Part shown: in pieces, positions 6,006 through 53,042 of the stretch
How the letters are laid out: every line of letters begins with the position of its first letter
Numbering within the stretch: position 1 is the first letter of the stretch
NCBI RefSeq assembly: GCF_947568905.1
Contig: NC_079165.1
Span: forward strand, 67,642,001 to 67,706,000
DNA from: Ostrea edulis
Lineage: Eukaryota
Length of the DNA: 64,000 nt
Direction of reading: 5' to 3'
Made by a program: the position numbers and the translations under genes
Notes under the pieces: generated by a model
The model's database searches: none
What the model saw: only the letters and a program-made list of their open reading frames with translations
Told to the model about the DNA's origin: nothing

Positions 6006-6779
6006 GTTGCATGTATATGTATATTCATGTAATAGAAATTGAATACTGCTCGGTATCAAAATGAACTACGATATATAAATAAATTGTCATTTATACAATT
6101 TTCATGCCGAACGCCATTTTCCCAAAACAACACTAGAGCAACAGTTGTTGTTTTATTCACATTCATGGAGTCTAATCTTTGTGCATGCACAGGCATGACT
6201 ATAGAGTTACCTGAGATTTCCCAATCAAAAACCCTCAATAATACTTTTAAGATAGCAATGGTATTCAAAGAAAAAGGAAGTGCTTTGTCTACTTTTGATT
6301 TGTAATATATGGAGTCATTGACTTTATGTCGTTTTCCGCTTTGATACTTGTAGAAGAAGTAGATTCTGTTATAAAATTAGAAATTATATTATTCATACAT
6401 GCTTCAAACCAATCGTCATTTTGAATAACCTTTTGTACACTTATCGGTACAATGTACATGTAGCAAGTCTTATTTATCCTTTGAAATCTTATCGGCAATA
6501 TTCTAACACGTACTTTTACCCTTAACGACAGTCATTGTGATAGATCCATTTTATATCATTATTTATTGTAACACAGCTTTTGTATAATTTTGATAAACCT
6601 TGTGAATTCTTACCTATGCGTATTTGGATACACCCTTTGTATTACAGGTGATTATGCTAATACAGTTACCAGTAGATATTCTTTTTTTATTCCTTGTACA
6701 ATTGAATGTAGTTATTCTGATTCACCCTTTGCACTCTTACCAGTAAATGATTTGCTAACATTTGTATGCTTACCGGTAC

Positions 6780-7720
6780 TTATTTTGATGCATTCTTTGT
6801 ACATTTACCGATAGCTATTCTGATACATTATTTGTACAGTTACCGGTAGTTATTCTGATGCATTATTTGTACACTTACTGGTAGTTATTCCGATGCATTA
6901 TTTGTACAGTTACCGGTAGTTATTCCGATGCATTATTTGTACAGTTACCGGTCTTTATTCTGATGCATTCTTTGTACAGTTACTGGTAGCTATTCCGATG
7001 CATTATTTGTATAGTTACCGGTCTTTATTCTGAAGCATTCGTTGTACTATATGTATTACCGGTAATTATTCTGAAGCATTATTTGTACAGTTACCAGTTA
7101 TTTGTCCAGTTACTGGTAGTAATTCTGATGCATTTTTTGCAGAGTTACCATTAGTTATTCTGATACATTGTACAGTTACCGGTAGTTATTCTGATACATT
7201 ATTTGTACAGTTACCGGTAGTTATTCTGATACATTATTTGTACAGTCACCAGTAGTTATTCTGATACATTCTTTGTACAGTTACCAGTTACTTGTCCAGT
7301 TACTGGTAGTAGTTCTGATGCATTTTTTGCAGAGTTACCAGTAGTTATTCTGATATATTGTTTGTACAGTTACCGGTAGTTATTCTGATGCATATTTTGT
7401 ACAGCTACCGGTAGTTATTCTGATGCATTATTTGTACAGTTACCGGTAGTTATTCTGATACATTATTTGTACAGTTGCCGGTAGTTATTCTGATACATTA
7501 TTTGTACAGTTACCGGTAGTTATTCTGATACATTATTTGTACAGTTACCGGTAGTTATTCTGATACATTCTTTGTACAGTTACCAGTAGTTATTCTGATA
7601 TATTGTTTGTACAGTTACCAGTAGTTATTCTGATGCATCATTTGTACAGTTACCGGTATTTATTATGATACATTATTTGTACAGTTACCAGTAGTTATTC
7701 TGTTTTATTCCTTGTACAAT
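6780..7720. repeat. 35-bp minisatellite, about 26 units, intron 3 of A
   Basis: Unit taccggtagttattctgatacattatttgtacagt; period 35 measured at 7441/7476/7511. Confidence 0.95.
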
Positions 7721-8587
7721 TAGATAAAGTTATTTTGTTTCACCCTTTCTACTCTTACCGGTAAATGTTTTGCTAACATTTGTATGCTTACCGGTACTTA
7801 TTTTGACACACCCTATATGGGGACTACACATTTCATCCAGACTACATTTACACTGGAAACCACAGTTCTCCCCATACGACGGGGGTGGACAAGTATTGGA
7901 ACAATTATCTCCATAGGAACCTGTAGGGCAGGCTACAGAAAAAGTTAAAGGAAGATGATAAAACTCTTAATGTTATTATAGACGCAGCCTGAATAATACA
8001 GTACCATATACAATGGTTTGTACATTGTACCATGAGAGAAAACTGCAAGCTAGAACATAGATCAAAGTCAATCATTTTTTCTTTGACTTAATTTTTTAAC
8101 TTTTAAATATGGCTTTCGATCAGAATGAAGAAGAATTAGTAAAAACTTACGAATGCATTCACCATTGTGATGGTGAAAATTCGTTCAGCACTCGTTTGTG
8201 GAAAAATGTGTGGTAATTAGATTCTATCTTCCAATAAATCTAAGAAGAATATCTATATTTTAATATTTTGAATATACATGTATGTGTACCTTTACCAAGA
8301 ATCAAATTTTGTACTCTTCTAAATTCAGTAAATATTGAGAAAAAATTAACCCATGAATAAAATTCAAAATGTACTGATATGGATTTATCCTCCCACTGGA
8401 TTCATTTCACTCACAAGATACTATTCCAAGTCATATCATTATTTATACATGTAGGTTAATGACTGGATATAGGGAAATATATTTTCAGAAGTTCTTGTGC
8501 CGAAAAGCGGACTCTGTGAGGTGTTTTTGTTATTGTAAATTCTGCAAAACGATAACGAGCTGGCATATTTCCCGATATGCAGTAAAA

Positions 8588-8856
8588 ACCTATCATTGGG
8601 TCAAATACTGTCTGACGTATTTATACCGATTGTTAGGTCGTTCTTGGCACACTGATTTTGACTACAGATAACTCCGTTTACCTGATCAGGATATAGGGCT
8701 TGCGGCGGGTGTGACCGGTCGACAGGGGATGCTTACTCCTCCTAGGCACCCGATCCCACCTCTGGTGTGTCCAGGGGTCCATGTTTGCCCAACTAAATTT
8801 TGTATTGCTTATAGGAGTTATGAGATTGATCACTGTTCGTTATCTTCACCTTTCAT
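8588..8856 (+). mobile_element. Penelope-like 3' fragment in intron 1 of A
   Basis: Conserved UTR; the 5' junction shares the microhomology aacctatc with host sequence seen in B (about 17080). Confidence 0.85.
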
Positions 8857-10029
8857 CACATTTGCTCTACATCTATCTACTTCTAACTCTATAAATGCTC
8901 AATTTTAAAAGAAAATATTATAATTAGCAAACGAAGTTCTTTACGTCCATGAATATTTGTGAACATATCAGGCCTCAAATCCATACACTGAAAATAGACT
9001 TTTAAAAATCAAAACACTAGAAATGTTATGTTCTTATGAAAAATATTTGAAAAGTTAATTGGATTTGAAATTTAGACTTAAGTCTATTCCCAGGTTATGG
9101 TTTTGAAAACTGATATCACAATAATCGTGTTAAGTAGGCAGATGCGATGTCACAATTAAGTTAAGTGGTCTCCGAGCGTCTGCATTACCGACAATTATAG
9201 CTCAATAAATGCCCAGGTACTCTAAATAAAATATACAGCAAAAAGTATCAAAATATGTAATAAGAGTGGCTATAGAAATATTAATATCGTGTCAATCTTA
9301 ACAGTTTGATATTTGTTTAAACATGCATTTCCTTGTTCTACGTACCGATCGTTAACACAGCTGCCTTTAGTTGTTGTTTCTGCATTGAGTGATGAAACCA
9401 AATAGGCTAATAATCCTATGTTTCGACCTCTCCGCGAATTAAAAATTATCATTTGAAATATTGAATCCATTCCATCTATACTTTTTAAAGATACTATGGA
9501 AACTCTATGGCTAATTTCCCTTCAAACATTTATTTTTCAATCATAGTAAAGTGTGTTATACCCCGGAAGATTCATTGATTGGGAAACACGTTTACCAATA
9601 TAGTTTAGAATTACAGTCAGAATCAACACCAAATCATATTTCTAAGAGACATAGTTCTTGGCAGCCTTCAATCATAAACGAAAATTATTCGACCATCATT
9701 ACTAACACCAGCACTAGATTTTACAGACTCTGAGAATGTAACAAGAGTGGTAGACAACGCACTAACATGACATGGGCAGGGCATCAGAAGAGGTAGCAGG
9801 TGTGTGAGATACAAAGGTGTCAGTTGGAATTGACGAAACGTAAGCAGAATTAGAAATACATATGATTTCTTTATTCAAAAGTTAGTTATTGATAGCTAGT
9901 CCCTAGAAACCATTCGATTTCCTCAATTCTATTTATTATAAGATTTGAACGTTATCCTAAAACATATCAAAAAGGAATAAGTAAATCAGTAATAAGTAAT
10001 CCAGTTAATTTAGGAGGATATTGAGATTG

Positions 10030-14218: not shown

Positions 14219-14580
14219 CTACTCATGGATAACTTCAAGATATGTGTCCATTTAACTGGTTAGCTCGCTTTGACAGATCGATGGACTTTCCACTTCAAAG
14301 GTGTGACACTCGGTCCGACTTCCGCTTTCTGACTTCCCTTTTGGTGGTGAACCTATCACGTCTATATACGTGTTTAACATACATACTGGTTTCAGGTAAG
14401 AATTATCTGGGGATTCATTAAGATTGTCAGTCACAACATCCAGATAAACTGAACGTCTCTCTTTCAAACTTTCATCTTCTTGTCTAATACTAAGTTCTTC
14501 TGATTTTGTACCAATGACTTCATTTCTTAATTTTGGAAGCATTGGTTTTGTTTCATTACTGATTTCAATTTTCGAAACAT
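14219..14580 (-). pseudogene. Out-of-frame distal tail of paralog B
   Basis: ORF 14252-14542 matches the D tail (SVYLDV, SYLKP, TYIDV) but lies after the frameshift. It also has CAA>TAA at 14252-14254 before the final TYLEV. Confidence 0.75.
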
Positions 14581-17500
14581 CTCCTTTGAGTTTTGTTGTT
14601 TTATTGAGGGTTGCGACTCGATTTTGTCGTATCTTGAAATATTTTCCAGCATGCCAGACTCGTTTATTTCTACATAAAGCTCTTCCTCTGCTTCGTTTGT
14701 AGCCGAGAGCTTGGGCTTTTTGCTTGCAGAAATGTTTTTCCTACGCTTTTTCATTTTTCCGTGAATCTGGTTAATTATTATAATAATCAGAAATAAAGAT
14801 AATACAGATCCTGTGATTATGATGACCTGCAAAGTTTGTGACTTACCTCCAGAAGCTGACTTAGGAGTCACAGAATTTGTTTCCTTGGATACCACTGCTA
14901 AGGTAGGAATGATATCCGTAGGAACAGGATATACTTCGTCTACTTTTGAACTGTTAGGATTTCTCGTTGATTTTGTTTCGACTTTTGGGGATTTTTGAAT
15001 TGACTTCATGTCGTTTCCTGCTTCGGTACTTGTTGTAGAAGTGGACGCTATTAGAAAATTAGAAATGTTAATGCATACATGTTTTATATGAATGTATCAA
15101 TTTAAGAATTGTCGTCTTTATATAATCCATTAAATAATTTATTATACACACTGATTAGTTGATACTTATATGAAATCAACATTTACCCTTTGTACGTTGA
15201 TAGTTCTTTTTGTACTCCCTTTCTGTACTTACCAGTAGTTAGTCTGCTACACCATTTGTATACCCCTGGTAGTTATTCTACTGATATATCCTTTCTATAC
15301 ACAAGCCGTAATTTATTCCAATACAACCTTTGTAAAATTAGTGGCATTCATTTTGATAAACATTTATGATTGCTTACCTGTGATTATTTTGATGCACCCT
15401 TCGTACGTTTACTGGTAGTTATTCTAATATACTATTTGTACAGTTACCGGTAGCTATTCTGATACATTCTTTGTTCAGTTACCGGTAGTTATTCTGATAC
15501 ATTCTCTGTACAGTCACCGGTAGTTATACTGATACATTCTTTGTGCAGTTACCGGTAGTTATTCTGATACATTATTTGTACAATTACCGGTAGTTATTTT
15601 GATGCATTGTTTGTACAGTTATCGGTAGTTAATCTGATGCATTTTTTGTACAGTCACCGGTAGTTTTTCTGATGCATTGTTTGTACATTCACCGGTAGTT
15701 ATTCTGATGCATTGTTTGTACAATTACCGGTAGTTATTGTGATGCATTGTTTGTACAGTTATCGATAGTTATTGTGATGCATTGTTTGTACAGTCACCGG
15801 TAGTTATTGTGATGCATTGTTTGTACAGTCACCGGTAGTTATTGTGATGCATTGTTTGTACAGTCACCGGTAGTTATTCTGGTGCATTATTTGTATAGTC
15901 ACCGGTAGTTATTGTGATGCATTGTTTGTACAGTTACCAGTAGTTATTCTGATGCATTCTTTGTACAGTCACTGGTAGTTATTCTGATACATTCTTTGTA
16001 CAGTTACCACTTTTTCCTCCACAACCGTTGCACTCGTGGTGGTATCTTTTCCTTATACACTTATATACAGTTATTCTGTTTCACCCTTTCTACTCTTTCC
16101 GGTTAATGTTTTGCTAACCATTTGTATGCTTACCGGTACTTGTTTTGACACACCCTATATGGGGACTACAAACTTCATCCGCACTACAATTACACTGGAA
16201 ACGACAGTTCTCCCCCCAAGACGGATATGGACAAGCAGTGGAACAGTTATCTCCATAGGAACCTGTAGGGCAGGCTACATATAAAATGAAAGTAAGATGA
16301 TAAAACTCTTAATGTTGTTAGAGACAGCGTGAATACGTCATAAGTTAAAATTTAGAATGGTTTGTACTAGGAGGGGAAAAAATGCAAGCCAGAACACAAT
16401 TCAAAATTGTGGCGGATCCAAGGGGGGGTTGATTCCGGGGATCGGACCTGCCCACTTTCGTAAGAAAATTTTGCTAAAAAGGTAAAATTAACGCATTTTG
16501 AGGATGGAAAACCCCTTTGAAAACCAAAATTATGGTCGAACCCCTCTTTAAGAATTCCTGGATCCGCCCCATACAAAGTCAATAATTCATGTTTTGACTT
16601 CGTGTTTTAATTGTTACATCAGATTGATGGAGAAATAGAGAGTGACTTACAAATGCATACACCATTGTGATGGTAAAAATTCGTGCAGCACTCGCCTCTG
16701 AAAAAAAAAGTTTTATTAGATTCTCTCTTCCAATAAATCTAACAAGAGAATCTATATAATGATATTTTGAATACATTTGTATGTTTACAAAGAATGATAT
16801 TTTGGAATTAGCGGAAAGTTGTAAATTCAATAGGCAACATATTAAGAGAAAAAAAATGAACCCATCAATAAAATTTCATGTGTATTGACATAGCCCCATG
16901 TTTCCACTACTTTCATTTTACTCACAAGATACTATTCCAAGTCTTATATCATTAGTCATACGTCATTGACTGAAATCGGGAAACATACCCACCGGAAAAT
17001 TGTTGCGCAGTAAAGCGGACCGAGTTTCCGAGGTTTGTTTCCGCGAAAAGACCGAGAACAGGTTCCGATATTCAGTAAACAACCTATCTATCGCATATGT
17101 GACGCCACAACTAGGTTGAGTAGGTATCTACAAAGCGGCCATTTAAGGTTCAATTAAAGTCAGGGTACTCTAAAATCTACAGGTATGAAAGGGGAAGATA
17201 GCGAACAGTAATCAATCTCATAACTCCTCTAAGCAATACAAAATAGAATTGGGCAAACACGGAACCTGGGACACACCAGAGGTGGGATCAGGTGCCTAGG
17301 AGGAGTAAGCAACCCCTGTCGACCGATCACACCGACCGTGAGTCCTATACCTTGACCAGCTAAACGGAGTTATCCGGAGTCAAAATCAGTGTGCCAAGAA
17401 CGGCCTAGCAATAGGTATGAAACATGTCAGACAGCATTTGACGCAATGAAAGGTTGTACTGGCAAACTAGATCTTGTGTATCGAATCAGTTGAGCGATAT

Positions 17501-19766
17501 AAACACCATATGCAGGTGATAATGGAATATTGCTACATAAATAGGGGAAGTTGACAATGTATAAGCTGAAATCATCCCGTTTGACATAAAGTTGAGTTGT
17601 TCCTTTGCCGGTTAAGGTAGTACTCTACATCGTCATAATGGCTGACTTCCTTTAAAAACATGGATGGAAAAATCGATATGAGCAATATTTGACTTTTCCT
17701 TTTACATTTTAATAGCTAGTCGAGTAACTCAGTAGTGTAGAATACCGATTGCTGAACTGTAGATCGCAGATTCGAGTCCAGCAGGGGTTTTCAATTTTTT
17801 TTTCATATTACCTTCTACTAAATCTATTTTTTGACAAAATAAAGTAGATTTGAGAATTTTCAACTTCAAAATATTGTTGTACATATCCCCCACATCTACA
17901 TCAAATTTCTCTGGTGTAGCATACCTCCTTAACATCTACTTTCGATAAAATATCTAGGAAGCAGATGTGCACGACTCTGTGGTGTCTTTTATTTCGAGTT
18001 CACAGGGATATATATCGAAATCATTGATTGGTTGTATCTTGTTTAAACGTCTCTCTCTTTCTCTCTCGATCGATCGATCGAGAGAGAGAGAGAGTTTCAC
18101 TCATATGAGACGTTACCAAGACCGGTGAAGGGTTTCAAATTTAGGCCTTTGCTCCGCGCTTACGATCATTGAGCAGTGAGGATTCTTTAGCATGCCACAC
18201 CTATTGTGACACGGACATCCGTTTTTAAGGTCATATCCGAGGACTCGCGACATTCACACCTTATACCGAGCGTTTGGTGATGGAACTGTCACTATTTTAA
18301 CAACTTAGGTCTGTCGTGGCCGGGATTCGAACCCTGGCCTTCCGCATACGGGGCGAACGCTTTAACCTCTAGACCACGGCGTCGGTTTATGGAAATGATT
18401 GATTAATTGATTGAATTATGATTTACGTCCCTCTTGAGAATATTTCACTCATATGGAGATGTCACCACTGCCGGTGAAGGGCTGCAAATTTTAGGCCTAT
18501 GCTCGGCGCTTATATCCATTGAGCAGGGAGGGATCTCTATCATGCCACACCTGCTGTGACACGGGGCCTCGGTTTTTGCGCTCTCATCCGAAGGACCATC
18601 CTATTTAGTCGCCTCTAACGACAAGCAAAGGGGTACGGAAGACCTATTCTAACCCGGATCCCCACGGGATTTATCGAAATGACATATGAATAAAAATTAT
18701 TATTGTTTTAAAATAGATAAAACTTCAACGATATATCTAAATGTCGAATTGAAGGCCACAGCAAGAGAGATTTTTCTTCTCACTTAGATTTTTTTGAATA
18801 AATTCTGCTTCATAGGAATATAAAAACAGGTCAGCTAAAAAAGTAGCATAACTTGTGCCCATGAGAATTCCAACAGACTGTTGGAAGACCTGATCACCAA
18901 ACACCACGAAGATATTGTCAATGAGGAACTCCATCATATTATTTATTTCAACTTCAGAGTACTTGTGGGTGGAATCAGAATGATGTTTAACAAAGTAATT
19001 TTTTTTGGATGAGTGATCACTAGACATGTATATGAATATTTCCGTTTTCCATTTTTGTTGAAGAAGCATCTGACTATGATGTCAAAAAGTCTAGTCTTAA
19101 TTCATCTTGAGGAATGGTCGTATAAAGTGTTGAAAAGTCATAGGTTTTGATGTTGTTGAGTTGAGAAAAGTTTTGCGATTTCAAATTTCCTGAAAGTTGT
19201 TTAGAATTTTTTAATGTCCACATTTGATTAACACCACTTCTGGCATATGTAGTTGCACAGTACGTTTTAAGTTTCTCCTTCAAAGCTATTAATATTTTCG
19301 TGAGGAGCAAATATAGGGGCTTGGTAGAGCACTTACTGTATCCAGCAATGTATCTTTGTTTGAAAGTGTTTTTATGAAGTTTAGAAATCCAGTATAAGTA
19401 CGGTAACTCATATTAATCCGACCCATTGACTGGCATATTAAATGTGTCTAAAACTGAAGCATGGTCTTGAAGAATTTCATCTTTTGAAAGGGCAGTTAGA
19501 TTATATATAAGATTACCAAAAATGGAATTAATGCCAAGTTCGGTTAAAATACAATATGTAATAAGAGTACATTAAGAAATATTAATATCGTGTCCATTTT
19601 AACAGTTTGATATTTGTCTACATACATACCCTTCTTCTACGTACCGATCGTTAACACAGTTGCCTTTACTTGTTGTTTCTGCATTGCGTGATAAAACCAA
19701 TAAGGCCAATCCTATGTTTCGACCTCCCCAAGAATTAAAAATTCTCATTGGAAATATTAAATCCAT
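14527..19766 (-). CDS. Paralog B: transmembrane EGF receptor with frameshift-truncated cytoplasmic tail (276 aa)
   Basis: Exons 19645-19766, 16651-16697 (GECCTNFYHHNGVCI), 16134-16274 (EGF), 14527-15047 (stalk, TM, proximal tail). Spliced frame is open for 831 nt. A 1-nt deletion relative to D near 14583 shifts the frame and the protein ends ...QCFQN*. Confidence 0.75.
15405..16010. repeat. 35-bp minisatellite, about 17 units, intron 3 of B
   Basis: Same unit with gatgcattgtttg and cagtcaccgg variants. Confidence 0.95.
16408..16571. mobile_element. Small MITE (ggcggatcca...tggatccgcc ends, hAT-like) in intron 2 of B
   Basis: Inverted termini; absent from the paralogous introns of A and C. 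Confidence 0.7.
17616..17928. mobile_element. TTAA-flanked MITE (Kolobok-like), 313 bp, inside a Penelope RT
   Basis: ttaa on both sides; imperfect 16-bp TIR ggtagtactctacatc / ggaggtatgctacacc (reverse complement); the uninterrupted target gccgttaatgtctac is seen at about 42538. Confidence 0.75.
18030..18386 (-). mobile_element. Full-length tRNA-headed SINE sharing its 3' half with the head-less family
   Basis: A box tggtctagagg and B box ggttcgaatcc; central tagtgacagttcc..ccaaacgctcgg; shared tail ...catatgagtgaaa. Confidence 0.85.
18400..18669 (-). mobile_element. Same head-less SINE-like family
   Basis: Same 5' start; TSD tatcgaaat (18013-18021 and 18672-18680) brackets this element and the adjacent tRNA-SINE. 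Confidence 0.85.
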
Positions 19767-20339
19767 TCCGTCTATGCTTTCTAAACTTACATTGGAAACT
19801 CTTTGACCCCTTTTCCTTCAAACATTTATTGTTCAATAATAGTCAGGTGTGCTATATCCTGATGGAATATTAGAGAACACGGAATATTCATTAATTACAT
19901 GCACGTTTTCGCACACTAGAAACAAATTATGCAATTGAACCAGTCAAACATTATGCATATATTCGACATTCCAAATGTTGCAATACTTGATCTTGTATAA
20001 TATTGTATTTGTATTCTGTATTTTCCTTTCCATTTTGTATTGTATATTTTTTATTAGTATTGTATTCGAGGAACTGTTTATTTTGATTAGTTATGAAGAA
20101 TTTTATTGGTCAAGTTTTAGTCTGTATCGTATTGAAAACTATCGAGATGTTCTGAATGCTCAACCTCAACATAAAATGTCCCTCTTTTCTCTGCATGACT
20201 AGTTTATACACGAGGTTGATGAGTGACAGAGTTAGAATCTATATGTAAGTAAACAGTAGTTATGAAAAATATATTGCCTATGGTTTGATAATTGAACCAT
20301 TGTTTACACAAATGAGATTCATTGTAACAAGCCAAAATA

Positions 20340-20600
20340 AACAATCCCTCAGATACAATATACACAAATGAAAAATAATATACAATTCAAATAAACAATT
20401 ATACAGTACAAATGAAAATCAATCAATGCAAAAGAAAATTATAAAACCAAAATGGAAATATAAAATACAAATGGGAAAAATACAATAAAACGAAAAAATT
20501 ATATAATTCAAATAGAAAATATACAATACAAAATGTATATTTTTACAATACAAATGAAAAATCATGCAATACAAATGGAAAATATAAAATGAAAAATCAA
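20340..20600. repeat. Degenerate ~21-bp A-rich tandem repeat (aatacaaatgaaaaat-like)
   Basis: Repeated tacaaatg(g)aaaa motif; an inverted-sense version lies at about 19990-20070. Confidence 0.6.

Positions 20601-23414: not shown

Positions 23415-23422
<8 letters not shown>

Positions 23423-23452
<30 letters not shown>
23423..23452. repeat. (AT)n microsatellite
   Basis: Direct reading. Confidence 0.95.
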
Positions 23453-23454
<2 letters not shown>

Positions 23455-23625
23455 CTCTTATCCTAAGACGAATTTGACTCCACCTTTTTTTTGGCACGCT
23501 GTTTTGGCTATAATAGCTCTAAAACTTCATTGTTATTTCGGATTTCAAACATTTTGGTTGAGCATCACTGAAGAGACATTATTTGTCGAAATGCGTATCT
23601 GGTGCATCAAAATTGGTACTCTATA

Positions 23626-23630: not shown

Positions 23631-23712
<82 letters not shown>
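23630..23712. repeat. Compound (CA)n(TA)n microsatellite
   Basis: Direct reading. Confidence 0.95.
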
Positions 23713-23715
<3 letters not shown>

Positions 23716-40604: not shown

Positions 40605-41450
40605 TTACTGGTTGTTATTCTGATACATTCTTTGTACAGTTACCGGTAGTTATTCTGATGCATTATTTGTACAGTCACCGGTAGGTATTCTGATACATTA
40701 TTTGTACAGTTACCGGTAGTTATTCTGATGCATTGTTTGTACACTTACCGGTAGTTATTTTGATGCATTGTTTATACAGTTACCGGTAGTTATTCTGATG
40801 CATTATTTGTACAGTCACCGGTAGGTATTCTGATACATTATTTGTACAGGTACCGGTAGTTATTCTGATGCATTGTTTGTACACTTACTGGTAGTTATTT
40901 TGATGCATTGTTTATACAGTTGCCGGTAGTTATTCTGATGCATTGTTTGTACAGTTACCGGTAGTTATTCTGCTGCATTGTTTATACAGTTACCAGTAGT
41001 TATTCTGATACATTCTTTGTATAGTTACCGGTAGTTATTCTGATACATTCTTTGTATAGTTACCAGTAGTTATTCTGATACATTATTTGTACAGTTACCG
41101 GTAGTTATTCTGATGCATTGTTTATACAGTTACCGTAGTTATTCTGATACATTCTTTGTACAGTTACTGGTAGTTGTTGTAATACATTATTTGTACAGTT
41201 ACCACTAGTTATTCTGATACATTCTTTGTACAGTTACCAGTAGTTATTGTGATGCATTGTTTGTACAGTTACCGGTAGTTATTCTGATATATTACTTGTA
41301 TAGTTACCTGTAGTTATTGTGATGCATTATTTGTACAGTTACCGGTTGTTATTGTGATACATTATTTGTACAGTTACCGGTAGTTATTCTGATACATTCT
41401 TTTTACAGTTACGGTAGTTATTCTGATACATTCTTTGAACCATTACCAAT
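40605..41450. repeat. 35-bp minisatellite, about 24 units, between duplicated EGF exons of C
   Basis: Same unit. Confidence 0.95.
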
Positions 41451-41989
41451 ATTCTTTCCGTCACACCCTTTGCACACGTGGCGGTATCTCTTCTTTATAC
41501 ACCTATATGCAGTTTTTTGTTTCATCCTTTGTACTCTAACCGGTAAATTTTAGCTAACATTTATACTCGTACCGGTATATTTTTTGCTAACCATTTGTAT
41601 GCTTTCCGGTAACACCCATTGCACACGTGGCGGAACATATATATCTATTCTTTATACACTGATATGCAGTCATTTGGTTTCACCTTTTGTACTCTTATCG
41701 GTATATTCCTAACATCTATATGCTTACCGGTACTTTTTTGACACACCCTATATAGGGATTACACACTTCATACGAACTATATTTACACAGGAAACCACAG
41801 TTCTCCCATACGACGGGAACGGACAAGTAGTGGAACAGTCGTCTCCATAGGAACCTGTAGGACAGGCTACAGAAAAATAAACCCAAAATGAATAATACAT
41901 AACTCATACAATGGTTTGTACTATGAACGGAAAAATGCAAGCTAGAACATAATCAATCATTTTTGTTTAGACTTCGTTTCTACTTTTAG

Positions 41990-43190
41990 ATGAATGGTGA
42001 AGATAACGAACAGTGATCAATCTCATAACTCCTACAACCAATACAAAATAGATAGTTGGGCAAACACGAACCCCTGGACACACCAGAGGTGGGATCAGGT
42101 GCCTAGGAAGAGTAAGCATCCCCTGTTGACCGGTCACACTCGCCGTGAGCCCTATATCCTGATCAGGTAACGGAGTTATACGTAGTCAAAATCAGTGTGC
42201 CAAGAAGGGCCTAACAATCGGTATGAAACACGTCAGACAGCATTCGACCCAATGATAGGTTGTATCGACGAACTAGATCGTTATAACGACCATAGAATTT
42301 GTGAAATGCTGACTTCAATCGAGACTATTGAAACCCTTGTATCATCAACTTGTTTGTCAGTAGCTTACCTCAATTTAAAAACTGACTATACGCAGAACAA
42401 GCTCTTGCATATCGAATCAGTTGAGATATATAAACACCATATGCAGGTGATAATGGAATGTTGCTACATAAATATGGGAAGTTGACGATGGAGAAGCTGA
42501 AATCATCCCGTTTGTCATACAGTTGAGTTGTCATTTTGCCGTTAATGTCTACTTTCAATAAAATATCTAAGTATGAAGCAGAAGTGGACGACTCTGTGGT
42601 TTCCTTTATTTCGAGCTCACAGGGATATATCAAATCGACATATGAATGAATGTTATTATTGTTAATAGACAAAACGTCATCAATATATCGAAATGTCGAA
42701 TTGAAGGCCACAGCGAGATATTTTTTCTTCTCACATAGAAGTTTTTGAATAAATTCTGCTTCATGTGAATATAGAAACAGTTCAGCTAACAAAGGAGCAC
42801 AATTCATGCCCATGGGAATTCCAACAGACTGTTGGATGACCTGATCACCAAAGACCACAAAGATATTGTCAATGATGAACTGAAGCATTTATTTTATTTC
42901 AACTTCAGAGTACTTGTGTGTGGAATCAGAGTGGTTTTTAACAAAGTAAGTTTTTGAATGACTGATCACTAGATATAAATATTTCCGATTTCCATTTTTG
43001 TTGAAGAAGCAACTGCCTATGATGTCGAAAAGTCTAGTCTTTAATTTATCGTGAGGAATGGTCGTGTATAGTGTTGAAAAGTGATAGGTTTTGATGTTAT
43101 TGAGTTGGGAAATATTCTGCGATTTCTAGTTTACTAAAAGTTCTTTAGAATTTTTTAGCATCCACATTTGATTAACACCACTTCTAGATA
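41990..43190 (-). mobile_element. Penelope-like (Naiad-type) retroelement, 5'-truncated, RT plus 3' UTR
   Basis: ORF 42370-42888 has QQSVGIPMGMNCAPLLAELFLYS and FRYIDDVL; KTYDFSTLYTTIP-like region upstream; conserved 3' UTR. Inserted into duplicated intron sequence that is uninterrupted at about 40455. Confidence 0.85.
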
Positions 43191-44769
43191 TATCTTTCAG
43201 TCAGACTGAAGTAGAATTAGAGAAAAATGTATGATGCATTTATTTTGATAGGCTGTGTGTGTTTACCTAGAATTAATCTAGTAAACCCTTTGTAACATTA
43301 TAGGTAGCTATTCTAATATATTTGCACAATTACTGGTTGTTATTCTGATACATTCTCTGAACCGTTACCAATATTTTTTCCATCACAATCTTTGCACACG
43401 TGACGGTATCTCTTCTTTATACACTTATATGCAGTTTTTGTTTCATCCTTTGTACTCTTACCGGTAAATGTTTGCTAACATCTATATGCTTACCGGTATT
43501 TATTTTGATACATCCTATATAGGGACTACACACTTTATCCGCACTACATTTACACCGGAAACCACAGTTCTCCCCGTACGACGGGTATGGACAAGTAGTG
43601 GAACAGTTATCTCCATAGGAACCTGTAGGACAGGCTACAGAAAAAATAAAAGTAAGATGATAAACTCTTGTTGTTATAGAAGCAACGGGAATAATACATT
43701 AACATATAAAATGGTTTGTACATTGTACTATGAGAGAAAAAGGGAAGGTATAACATAATTCTGAATGAATCATTTTTGCTTTTATTTTAACTCTTAAATA
43801 TAGCTTTCAATCAAACTGAAGGAGAATTAGACAGTAACTTACGAATGCATTCACCATTGTCATCGTAAAAATTTGTGCAGCACTCGCCTCTGCAAAAATG
43901 TTTTGTAATCAAATTATCTCTTCTAATAAGAATATTATATTTTGAATACATTTGTACGTATCCCAAGAATTAAATTTTGTACTGTTATAAATTCAGAAAA
44001 AAATTGAGAAAATATTGATTTTTCTCAAAAATTGAGAAAAAATTGATCCATGGATAGCATTCCACATGTTTTGACATAGATCTATCTTTCCACTAGATTC
44101 ATTTCACTCACAATATATTCTTGAAATTCATATATCACTATTCATAGGTTGTTGACTGGATATCGGGAAATATACCCGTCAGAGGTTCCTGTTTTGAAAA
44201 GCGGACCGAGGTTGCGAGGTGGTATTTGTTTTCTTTGTTAATTCTGCAAAACGATGAAGGGCTGGCATATTTTCCGTAAATAACCTTTTCATAGCATTTT
44301 TTCTCGTTGTATATACTTCACATTCTATTCATATTCCGCAATTTTGAAATAAATTTGATTTGAACATATTCTATTGTATAAATATACAAAGGGGTTGGTT
44401 ACAAGTTTTAGCAACTTAGAAAACCTATCCAGTATACAAGGTATATTATGGTATACATGTACAAATAAAGATTGTCATACATGTACCACAGAAAATATGA
44501 TAATCGTTATGATATACAATTATGATAATATACAATATATATGTATAGGTTCATTTAAGTACATAATCAGGCATAAAATGCAAAATATATTTAAAATATG
44601 ATATATATAGGTCTGATTAAAATCTGTTACAGTTCTTAATAAACTTCTGAACTGCTTTGAAAATATTAAAAATTACATCATCTGAAAAAATCCCTTTCCT
44701 TATAATAAAAAGTTGGCATCGACAACAGCAATGCCATTTACCTGAAATATTTTAGTTTGAATTAGAAAA

Positions 44770-45980
44770 AAAACTATGATAGGTAATCTGAAGATAACGA
44801 AGAGTAATCAATCTCGCAACTCCTATAAGCAATACGAAATAGATAGTTAGGCAAACACAGACCCCTGGACACATCAGATGTGGGGTCAAGTGCGTAGGAT
44901 GAGTAAGCATCCCTTGTCGACCGGTCACACCCACCGTGAGCCCTATATCTTGATCAGGTAAACGGAGTTATCCGTAGTCAAAATCAGTTTGCCAAGAACG
45001 GTCTAACAATCGGTATGAATAACGTCAGACAGCATTTGACCCAATGATAGGTTGCATTAGCAAACTAGATCGTTATATCTACCATAGAATTTGCGAAATG
45101 CTGACTTGAAATGATACTGTAGAAACCCCTGCACCATCAACTTGTTTGTCAGTAGCCTGCTTTGATTTAAAAACCGACCATACGCAGAACAACCTCTTGT
45201 GTATCGAATCAAGAGATATAAACACCATATGCAGGTGATAATGGAATATTGCTACATAAATATGGGAAGTTGACGATGGAGTAGGTGAATCATCCCGTTT
45301 GCATAAAGTTGAGCGGTTAGTTTGCCGTTAGTATTTACTTTCAATAAAATATCTTAGTATGAAGCAGAGGTGGACGAATCTGTGGTGTCTTATTTCGAGT
45401 TCACATGAATATATCAAATCGACAGTTATCATTGTTAATAGATAAAACGTCGTCGATATATATAAATGTCGAATTGAAGGCCACAACAAAAGATTTGTTT
45501 CTTCAAGTTTTTGAATAAATTCTGCTTCATAGGAATACAAAAACAGGTCAGCTAACAACGGAGCACAATTCATGCCCGTTTGAATTCCAACAGACTGTTG
45601 GAAGACCTTAACACCAAAGACCAGATAGATATTGTCAATGAGGAACTCCAGCATATTTTTTGTTTCAACTTCAAAGTACTTGTGCATGGAATCAAAGTGG
45701 TGTTTAAGAAAGTAATTTTTTGGATGACTGATCACTAGATGTGAATATTTGCGTTTTCCTTTTTTGAAGAAGCAACTGTCTATGATGTGAAAAAGTGTAG
45801 TCTTCAATCTATCGTGAAGAATTCTCGTGTGAAAAGTCATACGTTTTGATGTTATTGATTTGAGATTTACACCACTTCTAGAATATGTAGTGGCACAGTA
45901 ATTTGAAGTTTGTCCTTCACAGCTGTTAATATTTTCGTGAAGAGCAAAGATAGGGGCGTGGTAAAACACCTACTGGATAC
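44770..45980 (-). mobile_element. Penelope-like element in intron 1 of C
   Basis: ORF 45328-45969 (QQSVGIQTGMNCAPLLADLFLYSYEAEF) plus 3' UTR; the 5' junction lies about 10 nt from the exon 1 donor. Confidence 0.85.
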
Positions 45981-47029
45981 CCTTGTTCTACGTACCGATC
46001 GTCAACACAGTTGCATTTACGTGTTGTTTCTGCATTGAGTGGTAAAACCAATAAGGCTAATTCTATGTTTCGACCTCTTCATGAATTAAAAATTATCATT
46101 TGAAATATTAAATTCATTCTACCTACATACAATAGAAACTGTTTGACCCATTCCCCTTCAAACATTCATATTTCAATGATAGTCATGTGTGTTATATCCT
46201 GATGGAACAATAGTGAACACGGAAGATTCATTGATTGGGAAGCACATTTTCATAAACAGGAAACAAGTTATGCAATAAATTCAGTCAAACATTATACGTA
46301 TTGAGCATTCATATACGACTAAGCGTGGAAATGGCCATACTTGGCCCCGAATATTTCAAAATACATTGATTTCTTTGAAATAGTCAATTTCATATTGTTA
46401 TACGTTGAAACAAAAACGAATATCTGTTTTTCTTCAAGACGATTCCTATTTTCGGATATGACCTCACAAATTTGGTGAAGAAATAATCATTCTTTGTTAT
46501 AGGCATGCATCATTATCATTTTCATATATATCCAACACCTAAGATAGAATCATTCACAGGTGTGCTATATTTTATCGTTGTCGCCGCTCTCCAAATATCT
46601 ACTGCTTATGATTATGGCAATTTTTGACCATTTATACTTATAAATGAACAAATTTTGCCCATAAACTCCGAAATGCTTGCTCCAGAGTTACTGCTTGCAC
46701 TTAAATATTGCTTCATATATGAGGTGGAGTCCGTAAACTATAATAGAATATTACATCATGAGTAAATATCGTAAAATTAATTAAAATCCTACTTTCCTTT
46801 TCGATAAACTACTCTGAAATAGCAAATATGAAAGTAGAGTGGCGGACACGCTTGGCGGATCTAAGCCAGTTTTCTTTTTTTTTTTTTAAATGACAACTTA
46901 ATGACAATACGATATGAAGTAAATCCATTGGTTATCAATGCGTGATTTTAATCGAACAGAAGAAATATGTTTTTATAATTGTTGAATAAATAAAATGTGA
47001 ACATATCTTTACCGTTGCAGATTATTGAC

Positions 47030-48170
47030 ATATGGAACTTTGTTTATAGCACAACTCCATGACTCCCATTTCAGTGCAAGTTCGATCTCTTCTCATACTT
47101 CTGCCAAAGGATATGTTCACAAGATACTGGTATTACCAGATCCTACACATGGTTTCTGTCTTAAACTATCGCATCATGTTAGAAACCCTTTTCTCTATTT
47201 GTTTCCATTCTTTTCTGAGACTTGGTGAAGTCACTGTTAAGCAGGGCATTGTCCCTGATAAGGTCATTCAATTTAAAGATGTAGAATTTCAATACAATGG
47301 CTCAACTCTCTACAGAGTTCAATTAGTATTTCAAAACCCCCCAAAAAATGAATAAACCCATTACTATCTGTTTGGAGAGTTCCCCCATGCCTGACCATTG
47401 CCCTGTCAAAGCACTGTACCTCTATCTATCTCATTCAGGTCATACATCTGGTCCACTTTTTCAATACAGGGATCTCTCTCCAATTACATACAATTATGTT
47501 TCCAAGCAACTTCAACCATTGTAATATTTGTGGGAATCAATCCGGCATTGTATAAAGGTAACAGTTTCCGCATTGGTGCGGCAACATACGCAGCACAAAA
47601 AGGCGACTCTGAAAACTATATCTAGCAGTTAGGTCGTTGAAACTGAAAGGCCTTGAAAAGCTATATTCGAATCCCTACCCTCTCTGTTTGAGAACCCCAT
47701 TTTCTCACCCAGGGTAGTTCATTGATAGCTCAGTGATTAACTGCTATCTGATCTCTTTATACCTGACAGATATACATTCTTTTTTCCTTTACAGGACAGG
47801 TCAATGTGTAACTGCTGTATGTACAAATGTATATGTACAGTGTATCTTAAATACACAACATTTCCTATATTCCTGGAACTCCCCCCTCGGGTATCAAATT
47901 ATGCAGGTCTGTTTTACTGCTGCACCAAAGTCAATACAAAATATATTCGTTAGATAGGACATACGTTTTGTGTTGAACTCTGTAATTTTACTATGCAGGT
48001 CAGTGTTTAGCTGCTGCATCACCCCCTCCCTTACCTTGAAGCGTATTTACTTGTATGTTGACTCACAAATACTATTGAACAAATTATGGTTTGTTAGTCT
48101 ATGCAGATCTCTTTGTACAGTGGTAATTAGTTCATTGCAAACAGCTCACCTCGGATGGTTCTGAATATGA
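47030..48170 (+). mobile_element. Second, different DIRS-type tyrosine recombinase remnant
   Basis: FHSFLRLGEV, NSFRIGAATYAA, LGR..KALKSYIRIPTL; multiple stops. Confidence 0.8.
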
Positions 48171-49859: not shown

Positions 49860-50070
49860 TTGGCCTTCAACTCGACATTTAGATATATCGACGTTTTATC
49901 TATTAACAATTATTATTTCATTCATATGTCGATTCCATATATCTCAGTGAACTCGAAATAAAAAGTAACCACATAGTCTTCCACATCTGTTTCGTATTTA
50001 GATATTTTATGTGAGCATAGATGTTAACTGCAAATTACCAACTTAATTTTATGACAAACGGGATGACTTG
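49860..50070 (+). mobile_element. Penelope-like RT fragment
   Basis: AFNSTFRYID...ELEIK...DKRDD-like translation with indels. Confidence 0.75.
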
Positions 50071-50386
50071 TTTAGGGATTTTCTCATTCTCTTTAAGAAT
50101 TTGAATTTACAAAACCTAAATAGTTTGTGTACAAAGAAAACTTAAAGACCAATTTATCACAAACGAATTACAGTCATTCATCACTATTTTGAAAGGTAGC
50201 TATTTTAGTCTAAAGGATATGAAATGTAAATAAAATAGGTGACAGTTACAGATAATACAATGAAAAGATTGATCTTGTTTTTATCGTTGAAAGTTACGTT
50301 TAATCTGTTTTAGTACATGCTTATCCACATTATTTTTTACAAGTATTTGTTATATCAGATTAAAAACAAAATATGAATGGTCTCTA

Positions 50387-53042
50387 TTAATGGACAACTT
50401 CAAGATATGTGTCCCTTTGGCTGGTTAGCTCGCTTTGACAGATCGATGGACTTTCCACTTCAAAGGTCTGACACTCGGTCCGACTTCCGCTTTCTGACAT
50501 CCCTTTTGGTGGCGAACCTATCACGTCTATATACGTGTTTAACATACATACTGGTTTCAGGTAAGAATTATCTGGGGATTCATAAAGTGTGTCGGTCACA
50601 ACATCCAGATAATCTGAACGTCTCTCTTCCAAACTCTCATCTTCTTGTCTAACACTTGGTTCTTCTGGTTTAATATCGATCACTTTATTCCTTAATTTTG
50701 GACGCATTGCTTTTGTGACATCACAGATATCAATTTTCAAATCATCTTCGTTTGAGTTTTGTTGTTTTATTGACGGTTGCGACTCGATTTTGTCGTATCT
50801 TGAAATATTTTCCAGCATGCCAGACTCGTTGATTTCTACATAAGCCTCTTCCTCTGCTTCGTTTGTAGCCAAGGACTTAGGCTTTTGACTTGCGGAGATG
50901 TTTTTCCTACGCTTTTTCAGTTTTCCGTGAATCTGGTTAATTATTATTATGGTCAGAAATAAAGATAAAACAGGTCCCGTGATTATGATGACCTGCAAAG
51001 TTTGTGAGTTACCTCCAGCAACTGACTTAGGAGTCACAGAATTTGTTTCCTTGGATACCACTTCTAAGATAGGAATGATATCCGTAGAAACAGGATATAC
51101 TTTGTCTACTTTTGAATTGTAAGGATTTCTCATTGATGTTGTTTCCACTTTTATTGAATTTGGTGTTGACTCCATGTCGTTTCCTGCTTTGATACTTGTA
51201 GAAGGAGTGTACGCTGTTATAAATTTAGAATTGTTATCATTTTTACATGCTTTATATAAATGTATGAAATTAGAATTGTTCTCCTTATATAATCCATTCA
51301 ATTAGTCATCATATACACCAATTCGTTGATACTTAGATGAAATCAACATTTAGTAAAAGCATATAGAATTTGTATATGCTTCATAAACCTTTCTATACAC
51401 TTATTGGCAGATATTCTGATTTACCCTTTGTACGTCTATCGATAGTTATTTATACTCCTTTTCTGTACTTACCAGTTAGTCTGCCACAGCCTTTATACAC
51501 TTACCGTTATTCATTCTGATATACCATTTGTACACCTATCGATAATTCTTCTGATAAACATTTTGTACACTTAGCGGTAGTTATTCTGATAAACATTTTG
51601 TACGCTTAGCGGCAGTTATTTTGACAAATCCTTTATACATATATCCTTACTTATTGTAATACTGCCTTTATACAATTACTCATATCCATTCTCATAAACT
51701 CTTATTTGTACTTATATCGATAGTCTTATCATCGTTTACCGTTCGTCGATATTATATCCCCTTTGTATGCTTACCTGTACCGGTTGTTATTCTAAAATAT
51801 ATTTAGTAAACATACCATTGTTATGCTGGTACACTCTCTGTACGTTTTCTGGTGCTTATTTTGATGTACACTCTGTACATTTACCGGTACTTATTCTGTA
51901 CCACGTTTTCCACGCTTACTAGCAATTTTTCTGATATTCAATCTTTGTGCACTTACCGGTATATATCCTATAACATCCTTTTTATCTTATCACATCCTTT
52001 GTACACTTACGGCATTGTTCTTTGTAACTTACTAATATTTAGTCTGTTTCACCATTTGTACATTCACCTGAAGCTTGTTCATAAACCTTCGTATTCTTAC
52101 CGGTATCGATTCTGACACATCCTTTATAGGGATTGCACTCCTCATCCGGACTACATGTACACCGGTGCCCACAGTTCTTCCCGTAGAGCGGAGGTGAACA
52201 AGTTAAGGAACAGTTATCTCCATATGAACCCACAGGACAGGCTAAATACAAACAATAATAAATATAACACTCCCAGTGTTGTTCTTAATGTCTTAGGTGC
52301 AATGTACATAACGCGTTATTGTATGCATTGTTTTATGTGAAAAATCCAAGCTTAGAGCAAACTCCTGAATAATTAATTATTTGTATTTGTTCTTATATTT
52401 CACTCTTTCGATCATACTATTGCTGAATCATAGAATGACTTACGAATGCATTTCCCATTGTAACGGTAAAAATTCGTACAGCACTCGCCTCTGGAAAAAT
52501 GTTTTATGATTAAATTTTATCTTGCAATAAATATATGACAAACAACTACACAATGTCATTTTGAATATGTTTCCCAAGAGTGAAATTTTGACATTGCTAT
52601 CGTAAAGGTATAATTTAATCACATATACAGAAAAAAATTACACCTGCAAATATATGTAATACATGCATACATACATACATATATAGTTTCACGCCACTAC
52701 TAAATTCATGTTATTTACAAAGATAACATCCAAAGTCGGACTTCCAATATCATTGAGACCACTTGCTATTTTGTAACATTGATACATTTGCCGTTTTTGC
52801 CTCTATTATAAAAACCCTGTAATATAATGTATCCAGTAAATTTGAAATTCTCATTAGAAAAATCAATAACCTGTCTATTCCATAAGTTCGATATTTATCT
52901 GCATATACCCTTCTTCTACGTACCCATCGTTAACACAGCTGCCTTTAGTTGTATTTACATTGAGTGATAAAACCAATAAAGCCAATCTTATGTTTCGACC
53001 TCTCCATGAATTAAAAATCCTCATTTGAAATATTGAATCCAT
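50387..53042 (-). CDS. Paralog D: intact single-pass EGF-repeat receptor (CED-1/MEGF10/SREC-like), 4 exons, 377 aa
   Basis: Exons 52924-53042 (MDSIFQMRIFNSWRGRNIRLALLVLSLNVNTTKGSCVNDG, donor gtacgt), 52444-52490 (GECCTNFYRYNGKCI), 52101-52241 (CPVGSYGDNCSLTCSPPLYGKNCGHRCTCSPDEECNPYKGC), 50387-51213 (Ser/Thr stalk, TM VIIITGPVLSLFLTIIIINQI, KKRRK stop-transfer, Tyr-rich tail). All GT-AG, phases 2/1/1 compatible, total 1134 nt with no internal stop. Confidence 0.85.
51430..52050. repeat. Degenerate 35-bp minisatellite, intron 3 of D
   Basis: Recognisable units such as ttattctgataaacattttgtacacttagcggtag, but heavily diverged. Confidence 0.75.

What the first reader, a model, noticed from the sequence alone, without database searches (positions are those of the whole stretch)
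6289..53042. Duplicated two-gene cassette: Tyr-motif EGF receptor paired with a TM-less sibling
Seen: on the minus strand the order is D(TM)-C(no TM)...B(TM)-A(no TM). A and C end at the same early stop (...MTPYI(T/A)NQK*) just after the EGF exon, while B and D keep stalk, TM and tail. Known: CED-1/Draper/MEGF10/SREC proteins are EGF-repeat recognition and engulfment receptors, and paired receptor/soluble-decoy layouts occur in immune and allorecognition clusters. Inference: this is a rapidly turning-over receptor plus secreted-decoy locus. A and C now carry lesions in this haplotype, so the decoy may be functional only in other alleles.
Basis: partly seen in the sequence, partly recalled or inferred. 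Interest (0 to 1): 0.75.

Follow-up and report, generated by a model that had tools for sequence, protein, structure and literature searches.

The report
Oyster mini-EGF receptor array with decayed siblings
This stretch of flat-oyster chromosome holds four tandem copies of a small oyster-only cell-surface receptor gene; only one copy is intact, and the two "membrane-less siblings" are co-duplicated broken copies whose leftover end-exons may still serve to make soluble receptor forms.

Summary
The layout is real. On the minus strand of Ostrea edulis chromosome OX387705.1 lie D (TM), C (no TM), B (TM) and A (no TM). A and C end at the same stop (MTPYI(T/A)NQK*). That stop comes from shared 4-bp and 27-bp deletions, and from loss of the TM and tail part of the last exon, in a common ancestor.

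- **Intactness:** Only D is intact (RefSeq LOC125682187, 377 aa). B has a 1-bp deletion and a nonsense codon in its tail. A has a dead exon 2. C has a stop in exon 1, a frameshifted EGF copy and a Cys-to-Tyr change.
- **Missed exon:** A second short terminal exon (t2) lies about 4.3 kb below each sibling. RefSeq models from sister units use it: an intact secreted A-type paralog (156 aa) and TM-less isoforms of upstream TM genes.
- **Array:** D-C-B-A is a four-gene unit seen whole or in part at five places over about 390 kb.
- **History:** In the 5' halves D is the outlier and A, B and C are equidistant, so a simple (A,C)/(B,D) cassette duplication is not supported there.
- **Protein type:** One Tie/MEGF-type EGF module, TM, and a conserved ITAM-consensus tail. 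It has no EMI domain, EGF array or NPxY motif, so it is not a CED-1/Draper/MEGF10 member.

I found no usable RNA data. My verdict is an ordinary birth-and-death receptor array. A decoy function for A and C is unproven.

The parts
50387..53042 (-). Gene D, the only intact gene here (RefSeq LOC125682187, 377 aa). Exon 1 with signal peptide is 53042-52924, exon 2 is 52490-52444, the EGF exon is 52241-52101, and the last exon (stalk, TM, ITAM-type tail) is 51213-50387.
   Evidence: The exons match P0001 at 100% and the splice sites were read directly.
39657..47447 (-). Gene C (RefSeq 159-aa model P0013, auto-named 'MEGF6'). The model starts at 47447 (MYDLNEIDR, no signal peptide). The native exon 1 is 46117-45996 and has a TGA at 46081-46079. 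Exon 2 is 43889-43843. The three EGF exons are 43634-43494 (intact), 41866-41728 (139 nt, frameshifted) and 40325-40185 (Cys-to-Tyr at 40245-40243). The t1 exon is 39733-39657 and ends MTPYIANQK*.
35085..35197 (-). The t2 short terminal exon below C. It encodes ASTFSTKTKAGNHLK...CMSK*, is an intact ORF, and has a CAG acceptor in phase 1.
   Evidence: tblastn with P0015, P0016 and P0017 gives 84-89% identity. A 110-nt contig of run X1 lies on 35090-35198.
14219..24747 (-). Gene B, a TM type with a broken tail. The alternative exon 1 is 24747-24613, exon 1 is 19766-19645, exon 2 is 16697-16651, the EGF exon is 16274-16134 and the last exon is 15047-14219. There is a 1-bp deletion at 14585/14584 and a TAA at 14254-14252. 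An internal consensus donor GGAG|GTAAGT ends at 14847, just before the TM-coding part.
   Evidence: No RefSeq protein matches B exactly.
6289..9470 (-). Gene A, a TM-less pseudogene in this assembly. Exon 1 (9470-9349) is intact. Exon 2 (8197-8151) has lost its acceptor (AC at 8199-8198) and has a TGA at 8187-8185. The EGF exon (7932-7792) is intact. The t1 exon (6365-6289) ends MTPYITNQK*.
1924..2036 (-). The t2 short terminal exon below A. It encodes ASTFSTKTKAGNYMK...CMSN* and is an intact ORF.
6770..7702 (-). A 35-bp minisatellite in the intron after the EGF exon of A. The same array occurs in B (15384-16008), C (40601-41437) and D (51492-51628). It is not coding.
   Evidence: TRF result. 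Its intronic position follows from the D gene model.

Best explanation
The window is one unit of a tandem birth-and-death array in Ostrea edulis. The array spans at least 390 kb, from 67.47 to 67.86 Mb of OX387705.1.

The family is oyster-specific. Its members are small type I membrane proteins made of a signal peptide, a 12-cysteine head containing one Tie/MEGF-type EGF module, a Ser/Thr-rich stalk, a TM segment, and a tail of about 180 aa. The tail has a conserved ITAM-consensus motif (ExxYxEI, 11 residues, YDKI) plus distal YxxV/I motifs.

The repeating unit has four genes: D-type (TM), C-type (short), B-type (TM), A-type (short).

A and C descend from one ancestor that was already truncated. 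In that ancestor's last exon, 4-bp and 27-bp deletions created the NQK stop, and the TM and tail part was lost. After that ancestor was copied, A and C each decayed further at their 5' ends. In this assembly they are duplicated pseudogenes, not working decoy genes. B is also disabled or truncated. Only D is intact.

Shown: the anatomy, the lesions, the shared deletions, the array structure and the motifs.

Inferred: that the family signals through its ITAM-type tail, and that the lesions abolish independent A and C products.
For: - **Identity and position:** D matches P0001 exactly, and the window sits at OX387705.1 about 67.642-67.706 Mb.
- **Shared derived deletions and breakpoint in A and C:**
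- **Independent later lesions:** A exon 2; C exon 1, second EGF copy and third EGF copy; B tail.
- **A third copy of the A type:** the copy below P0006 has lost its exon 1 donor, exon 2 and the t1 acceptor.
- **Same gene order in other units:** P0003 plus a short gene; a short gene, then P0002, then P0017; P0006 plus an A-like gene; and D' plus C'.
- **Selection on the EGF exon:** among A-like copies nearly all differences change the amino acid (15 of 16 pairwise differences, dS about 0). B-like and D-like copies give dN/dS of 0.25-0.8.
- **No exon-limited conservation at t1 or t2:**
- **Domain assignment:** the EGF module matches Tie2 EGF3 at E = 1.4e-5.
- **Tail motifs:** the ITAM-consensus motif and the TM segment are conserved down to homologs of 37% identity.
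- **Taxonomic range:** named relatives are from Ostrea and Saccostrea.
Against: - RefSeq annotates C as protein-coding (P0013) and splices into the t1 exon, so there may be transcript support that I cannot see.
- An A-type paralog is annotated as intact with a signal peptide (P0017).
- Exons of A and C are modestly more alike than their flanks (91.1% against 86.6%).
- Reads in other individuals show the Cys codon at 40244. This could mean the Cys-to-Tyr lesion is polymorphic, or it could be cross-mapping of paralogous exons.
- B's 1-bp deletion lies in an A-run and could be an assembly error. Its nonsense codon is a substitution and could not.
Confidence: 0.7

Rival explanations
1. Exon capture. 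The siblings are dead as genes, but their 3' exons (their EGF exons, t2, perhaps t1) are used as alternative terminal exons by the TM gene upstream. D would splice into C's exons. B would splice from its EGF exon, or from the internal donor before its TM, into the t2 exon at 2036. The result would be soluble ectodomain isoforms, that is, a decoy made by splicing rather than by a separate gene.
For: - RefSeq isoform P0015 joins exons 1-3 of a D-like gene to the EGF and t2 exons of the decayed short gene downstream. The t2 part matches at 100%.
- P0016 joins a B-like gene, cut at '...SASG' just before its TM, to a t2 exon.
- B carries a perfect GGAG|GTAAGT donor at exactly that point.
- All exon phases are compatible.
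- All six t2 copies keep the acceptor, the open frame and the stop position.
- A 110-nt contig of the possibly-RNA run X1 ends at the t2 acceptor, although the genomic flank there is conserved among paralogs.
Against: - These are computed gene models from sister units. Their evidence is not visible here, and no such isoform was found for the window's own B or D.
- t2 is no better conserved than its flanks, and its 3' half changes mostly at the amino-acid level.
- X1 is only guessed to be RNA.
Confidence: 0.3
2. A and C are (or are in other alleles) independent genes for secreted decoys that end at the NQK stop, kept next to their receptors by selection.
For: - The receptor-then-short-gene order recurs in every unit examined.
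- P0017 is an intact secreted A-type paralog.
- Saccostrea cucullata has an independent 113-aa TM-less model, P0014.
- The t1 exon differs at 1 of 77 positions between A and C.
Against: - Each of the four distinct t1-bearing copies examined (C and its near-identical copy counted once) has a disabling lesion or skips t1. A has a dead exon 2. C and C' have a stop in exon 1. The L006 copy has lost splice sites. The P0017 gene has a 1-bp deletion in t1 and its model skips it.
- The high identity around t1 extends about 80 nt upstream and about 60 nt downstream, so it is not exon-limited.
- The NQK stop arises from a frameshift, and out-of-frame homology continues after it.
- Recurrent order is expected from copying of whole units.
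Confidence: 0.1
3. Part of the apparent duplication and decay is an assembly artefact, from uncollapsed haplotypes or consensus errors.
For: - The C-D block occurs a second time about 204 kb away at 98.7% identity over 23.4 kb. That level is within the heterozygosity I would expect for an oyster, from my own knowledge.
- B's frameshift is in a homopolymer.
Against: - A against C and B against D differ by 10-25% and have different transposon content, far beyond allelic difference.
- Most lesions are substitutions or multi-base deletions shared by distinct copies.
- DNA contigs from three other samples cover the C region.
Confidence: 0.1

Closest known systems
Draper / CED-1 / MEGF10-12 / PEAR1 engulfment receptors
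   Same: Both are type I membrane proteins with an 8-Cys Tie/MEGF-type EGF module. Their tails carry tyrosine motifs; Draper carries an ITAM (YxxI, 11 residues, YxxL; from my own knowledge). RefSeq auto-names several members 'cell death abnormality protein 1-like', 'MEGF6/11' or 'PEAR1-like'.
   Different: These proteins have one EGF module instead of 15 or more, no EMI domain, no NPxY motif, and a length of about 380 aa. They resemble this family in one module and one motif, and are not members.
Tie2 (angiopoietin receptor) EGF-like domains, and SCARF1/SREC-I
   Same: The EGF exon aligns to Tie2 EGF3 with its cysteines in register (E = 1.4e-5). There is a weak hit to SCARF1 (E = 0.095).
   Different: There are no Ig or FN3 domains and no kinase, and there is no EGF array.
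Vertebrate immune-receptor clusters (KIR/LILR type) with pseudogenes and secreted members such as LILRA3, and soluble receptors made by an alternative terminal exon such as sFlt-1
   Same: This is a tandem birth-and-death array in which ITAM- or ITIM-type TM receptors sit next to truncated or TM-less copies. RefSeq models show soluble isoforms made with an alternative 3' exon. The vertebrate examples are from my own knowledge.
   Different: The ectodomain fold is unrelated (EGF, not Ig). The alternative exons lie in a decayed neighbouring gene, not in an intron of the same gene. Function and expression are untested.
Other flat-oyster 'mini-EGF receptor' clusters noted by this scan (s1-271430, s1-281906)
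   Same: They are described as one-EGF membrane receptors in tandem clusters with tyrosine-motif tails, in the same genome.
   Different: They lie at other loci. I did not compare their sequences with this array.

Membership tests
CED-1/Draper/MEGF10 engulfment receptors | N-terminal EMI domain | tested here: not met
   Pfam scans of P0001, P0008, P0013, P0015 and P0017 give no EMI hit and no hit above any cutoff.
CED-1/Draper/MEGF10 engulfment receptors | Long array of tandem EGF / laminin-type EGF repeats | tested here: not met
   Each TM gene has one EGF exon. Two or three modules occur only in the chimeric model P0015 and the decayed model P0013.
CED-1/Draper/MEGF10 engulfment receptors | NPxY motif in the cytoplasmic tail | tested here: not met
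   A pattern search finds no NPxY in any of the 12 TM homologs.
CED-1/Draper/MEGF10 engulfment receptors | YxxL/I or ITAM motif in the tail | tested here: met
   E-x-x-Y-V-E-I, then 11 residues, then Y-D-K-I, about 25 aa after the TM. It is present in 11 of the 12 TM homologs. P0003 lacks it, and in Saccostrea P0008 the second motif reads YDKM.
ITAM-bearing immunoreceptors | Consensus D/ExxYxxL/I, 6-12 residues, YxxL/I in the tail of a membrane protein | tested here: met
   Pattern match. The consensus is as quoted in PMC6994640, which also shows ITAM-Syk signalling in an oyster.
ITAM-bearing immunoreceptors | Tyrosine phosphorylation and recruitment of a Syk-family kinase | not testable with these tools
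   This needs biochemistry.
Paired receptor plus secreted decoy gene | The sibling encodes an intact signal peptide and ectodomain without a TM | tested here: not met
   A has a dead exon 2 and C has a stop in exon 1. The RefSeq model of C has no signal peptide. The feature is met only by the paralog P0017 in another unit.
Paired receptor plus secreted decoy gene | The sibling is expressed and spliced | tested here: inconclusive
   No run on record as RNA holds the stretch. Only short contigs of one possibly-RNA run were found.
Duplicated (unprocessed) pseudogene | Retains intron-exon structure but carries disabling lesions, with relaxed constraint | tested here: met
   Differences among A-like EGF exons are almost all non-synonymous.

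The most novel reading that the evidence does not exclude
Across the whole array, the decayed TM-less siblings are kept as exon donors. The upstream ITAM-type receptor gene would read through and splice into the sibling's EGF and t2 exons, or from a donor just before its own TM into t2. Each receptor would then make its own soluble decoy from one promoter. Even B, whose TM and tail are broken, could still yield a soluble product.
Probability: 0.3. Interest if true: 0.6.

Novelty: new member of a known kind. Interest (0 to 1): 0.36.

Why it matters
Oysters lack antibodies and rely on expanded germline receptor families. This array shows one such family in detail: oyster-only one-EGF receptors with an ITAM-type tail, copied as a four-gene unit and decaying quickly.

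It corrects database names ('MEGF6', 'CED-1-like') that suggest engulfment receptors. It also shows that only one of the four genes in this window is intact.

If the exon-capture reading holds, it would be a simple route by which gene-duplication debris becomes a source of soluble receptor isoforms. That could be tested with existing RNA data.

Tried and rejected
- **Pfam** on single exons and on whole proteins gave nothing above cutoff.
- **AlphaFold2 model of P0017** from a 14-row alignment had mean pLDDT 46. That is too poor for a fold search, so none was run.
- **Sequencing runs:** five runs were listed and none is on record as RNA. Laying them on 35050-40560 was swamped by transposon copies. 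No splice joint could be read, because all runs were kept as short contigs.
- **Exon-specific constraint at t1:** the 1-in-77 difference between A and C looked promising, but the conserved block extends into both flanks.
- **Exon-specific constraint at t2:** the exon is no better conserved than its flanks.
- **Single cassette duplication giving (A,C) and (B,D):** rejected for the 5' halves. Flank identities are A-C 84%, A-B 84%, B-C 81%, and 78-79% for every pair with D. The EGF tree puts the D-like copies outside all others with 100/100 support.
- **Exact-product look-ups** for P0004 and P0016 found nothing on record.
- **Papers:** no paper mentions the LOC identifiers, and general searches found nothing on this family.
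- **Joined models left out:** joined, spliced models of A and B have no reference. Exons were searched one by one by reference, and stored RefSeq proteins were used instead.


Full report
**Where this is.** The 304-aa open frame at 50390-51301 (minus strand) finds Ostrea edulis proteins. RefSeq protein P0001 (LOC125682187, 377 aa) maps onto the window in four exons at 100% identity. The gene look-up places it on chromosome OX387705.1 of assembly GCA_947568905.1. Window position x equals record position 67,642,000 + x. The window has no N runs.

**Gene structure.** D gives the template:
- Exon 1 (53042-52924) encodes the signal peptide.
- Exon 2 (52490-52444) encodes GECCTNFY..NGKCI.
- The EGF exon (52241-52101) is phase 1 at both ends.
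- The last exon (51213-50387) encodes a Ser/Thr-rich stalk, a TM segment (VIIITGPVLSLFLTIIII) and a tail of about 180 aa.

The 35-bp minisatellite lies in the intron after the EGF exon and is not coding. The same four exon types recur for B, C and A.

The order on the minus strand is D, C, B, A. A and C end in an exon I call t1 (6365-6289 and 39733-39657). It reads ESTSSTSIKAENDIKSMTPYI(T/A)NQK*. An alignment of the four last exons shows why. A and C share a 4-bp and a 27-bp deletion, which together shift the frame by one base. The stop is the out-of-frame reading of the ancestral ...NSKVDK... codons. Homology to B and D continues out of frame for about 80 nt and then ends at the same breakpoint in A and C, before the TM-coding part. 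The truncation therefore happened once, before A and C separated.

**Lesions.** Only D is intact.
- **B:** a 1-bp deletion (14585/14584) ends the frame 18 codons later, and CAA has become TAA at 14254-14252. No RefSeq protein matches B exactly.
- **A:** exon 2 has lost its acceptor (AC instead of AG at 8199-8198) and has TGC changed to TGA (8187-8185). Skipping exon 2 would break the frame.
- **C:** a TGG-to-TGA change in exon 1 (46081-46079), a 139-nt second EGF copy with a stop, and Cys-to-Tyr in the third EGF copy (40245-40243).

RefSeq still models C as a 159-aa protein (P0013, auto-named 'MEGF6'). That model starts at an upstream ATG (47447, MYDLNEIDR), has no signal peptide, uses a shortened second EGF exon and ends in t1.

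Other short RefSeq models were found with P0013 as query. They end in a different tail, ASTFSTKTKAGNY...CMS(N/K)*. This exon, which I call t2, is present and intact at 2036-1924 (4.3 kb below A's t1) and at 35197-35085 (4.5 kb below C's t1). Both have a CAG acceptor in the right phase. Three models use t2:
- **P0017** (156 aa, 'cell death abnormality protein 1-like') is an A-type gene in a sister unit. It has an intact signal peptide, exon 2 and EGF exon. It skips its own t1, which has a 1-bp deletion, splices to t2, and ends in one further short exon about 2.3 kb downstream.
- **P0015** joins exons 1-3 of a D-like gene to the EGF and t2 exons of the decayed short gene downstream.
- **P0016** joins a B-like gene, cut at ...SASG just before its TM, to a t2 exon.

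B in the window has a perfect donor GGAG|GTAAGT at exactly the point where P0016 is cut.

**The array.** Look-ups of P0003, P0002, P0006, P0013 and P0017 and an exon catalogue show the same order elsewhere on the chromosome:
- P0003 (D-like) followed by a short gene, at 67.85 Mb.
- A short gene, then P0002 (B-like), then P0017 (A-like), at 67.79-67.75 Mb.
- The window itself.
- P0006 (B-like) followed by an A-like copy, at 67.565-67.550 Mb.
- D' followed by C', at 67.49-67.47 Mb.

The last block is 98.7% identical to the window over 23.4 kb and gives the same 159-aa product. It may be a very recent duplication or an uncollapsed haplotype. The A-like copy below P0006 has lost its exon 1 donor, exon 2 and the t1 acceptor.

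**History.** In a tree of the EGF exon plus flanks, the D-like copies are separated from all others with 100/100 support. B-like, A-like and C/E-like copies form groups that follow position in the unit. For exons 1-3 with flanks, the flank identities are A-C 84%, A-B 84% and B-C 81%. Every pair that includes D is at 78-79%. The four-gene unit therefore predates the copying of units. A and C pair only through their derived 3' ends and downstream flanks. B and D share only the ancestral TM exon. A single duplication of a two-gene cassette does not fit the 5' halves, unless gene conversion has homogenised them.

**Selection.**
- Among A-like EGF exons, 15 of 16 pairwise differences change the amino acid (dS about 0). 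The cysteines are all kept.
- B-like and D-like copies give dN/dS of 0.25-0.8.
- Exons of A and C are somewhat more alike than their flanks (91.1% against 86.6%).
- The striking 76/77 identity at t1 sits in a conserved block that reaches into both flanks.
- t2 is no better conserved than its surroundings, and its 3' half varies mostly at the protein level.

The counts are small. They fit relaxed constraint and do not exclude diversifying selection.

**What kind of protein.** Pfam gives nothing above cutoff. Against solved structures, the EGF exon aligns with Tie2 EGF3 (E = 1.4e-5), with a weak hit to SCARF1. The tail has no NPxY motif. It does have E-x-x-Y-V-E-I, then 11 residues, then Y-D-K-I about 25 residues after the TM. 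This motif is present in 11 of the 12 TM homologs, including ones of only 37% identity; P0003 lacks it, and Saccostrea P0008 reads YDKM. It fits the classical ITAM consensus as quoted in PMC6994640, which shows ITAM-Syk signalling in an oyster. The tail also has S-x-Y-L-D-V and a C-terminal Y-L-E-V-V.

A full-library search finds 474 representative clusters at E of 0.001 or better. Most match only the cysteine-rich head. The named ones are Ostrea and Saccostrea proteins, 'uncharacterized' or auto-named. Saccostrea cucullata has an independent 113-aa TM-less model. It reads through the EGF exon's donor and has no last exon downstream. The AlphaFold model of P0017 was too poor to use.

**Expression.** One search for runs and one laying of reads were allowed. 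No run on record as RNA holds 35050-40560. In run X1, which is only guessed to be RNA, depth sits on the t2 exon and on C's third EGF exon but not on the neighbouring introns. A 110-nt contig ends at the t2 acceptor. A 315-nt contig lies just below the t1 stop. Both are 95-96% identical to the window, so they come from paralogs or from another individual. DNA runs show the Cys codon at 40244, but paralogous exons are 92-94% identical and could cross-map. Nothing here is decisive.

**Verdict.** The 'receptor plus secreted decoy' reading is only partly supported. In this assembly A and C are co-duplicated, further-decayed pseudogenes, and B is also damaged. The locus is a typical birth-and-death receptor array of an oyster-only mini-EGF, ITAM-type family. 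RefSeq already annotates it, under misleading names. The most interesting reading still open is that the siblings' leftover exons serve as alternative terminal exons that give soluble isoforms of the upstream receptors. RefSeq models show this in sister units, but it is untested here.

Joined, spliced models of A and B were not sent to any search tool. I used only exon references and stored proteins.

Noticed in passing
L004 (OX387705.1 67467770-67495560) against window 29657-57447: A second copy of the C-D block lies about 204 kb away. It is 98.7% identical over 23.4 kb and encodes the identical 159-aa C product. It is either a very recent segmental duplication or an uncollapsed haplotype in the assembly.
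   Followed up: partly
window 24613-24747 (-): This is an alternative first exon (MMRDILPLFNTS... type) upstream of B. Its counterparts are used by RefSeq models P0005, P0006, P0007 and P0016, so B-type genes have two alternative signal-peptide exons.
   Followed up: partly
window 14838-14853 (-): B has a consensus 5' splice site GGAG|GTAAGT inside its last exon, just before the TM-coding part. D and the other TM paralogs have GTAACT at that point. RefSeq isoform P0016 is cut at exactly this point.
   Followed up: partly
window 6770-7702, 15384-16008, 40601-41437, 51492-51628: A 35-bp minisatellite sits in the intron after the EGF exon of all four genes. Its unit resembles the exon's 3' end plus the donor (..ACCG|GTAA..), so each repeat carries a donor-like site. 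The scan already noted this (s1-301994).
   Followed up: partly
window 2872-3260, 5787-6012, 8587-8858, 41990-42260 and more than 15 other places: A short interspersed repeat of about 220-390 bp is present in more than 20 copies in both orientations. Reverse-transcriptase-bearing retroelement fragments also occur (42373-42888, 45328-45969, 18737-19069, 36002-36493). These dominate the read depth in public runs.
   Followed up: no
L008 (Saccostrea cucullata JAVVLV010020891.1) 2143-2946: This is an orphan TM-less family member (113 aa) with signal peptide, exon 2 and EGF exon. Its model reads through the EGF donor to a stop. No last exon lies downstream, and the next gene is a VWA-domain protein.
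   Followed up: partly
window 39295-39602 and 35090-35198: Contigs of run X1 (guessed to be RNA, and from a different organism label than the DNA runs) lie just below the t1 stop and exactly on the t2 exon, at 95-96% identity. This hints that t1- and t2-type exons are transcribed in some paralog or relative.
   Followed up: no
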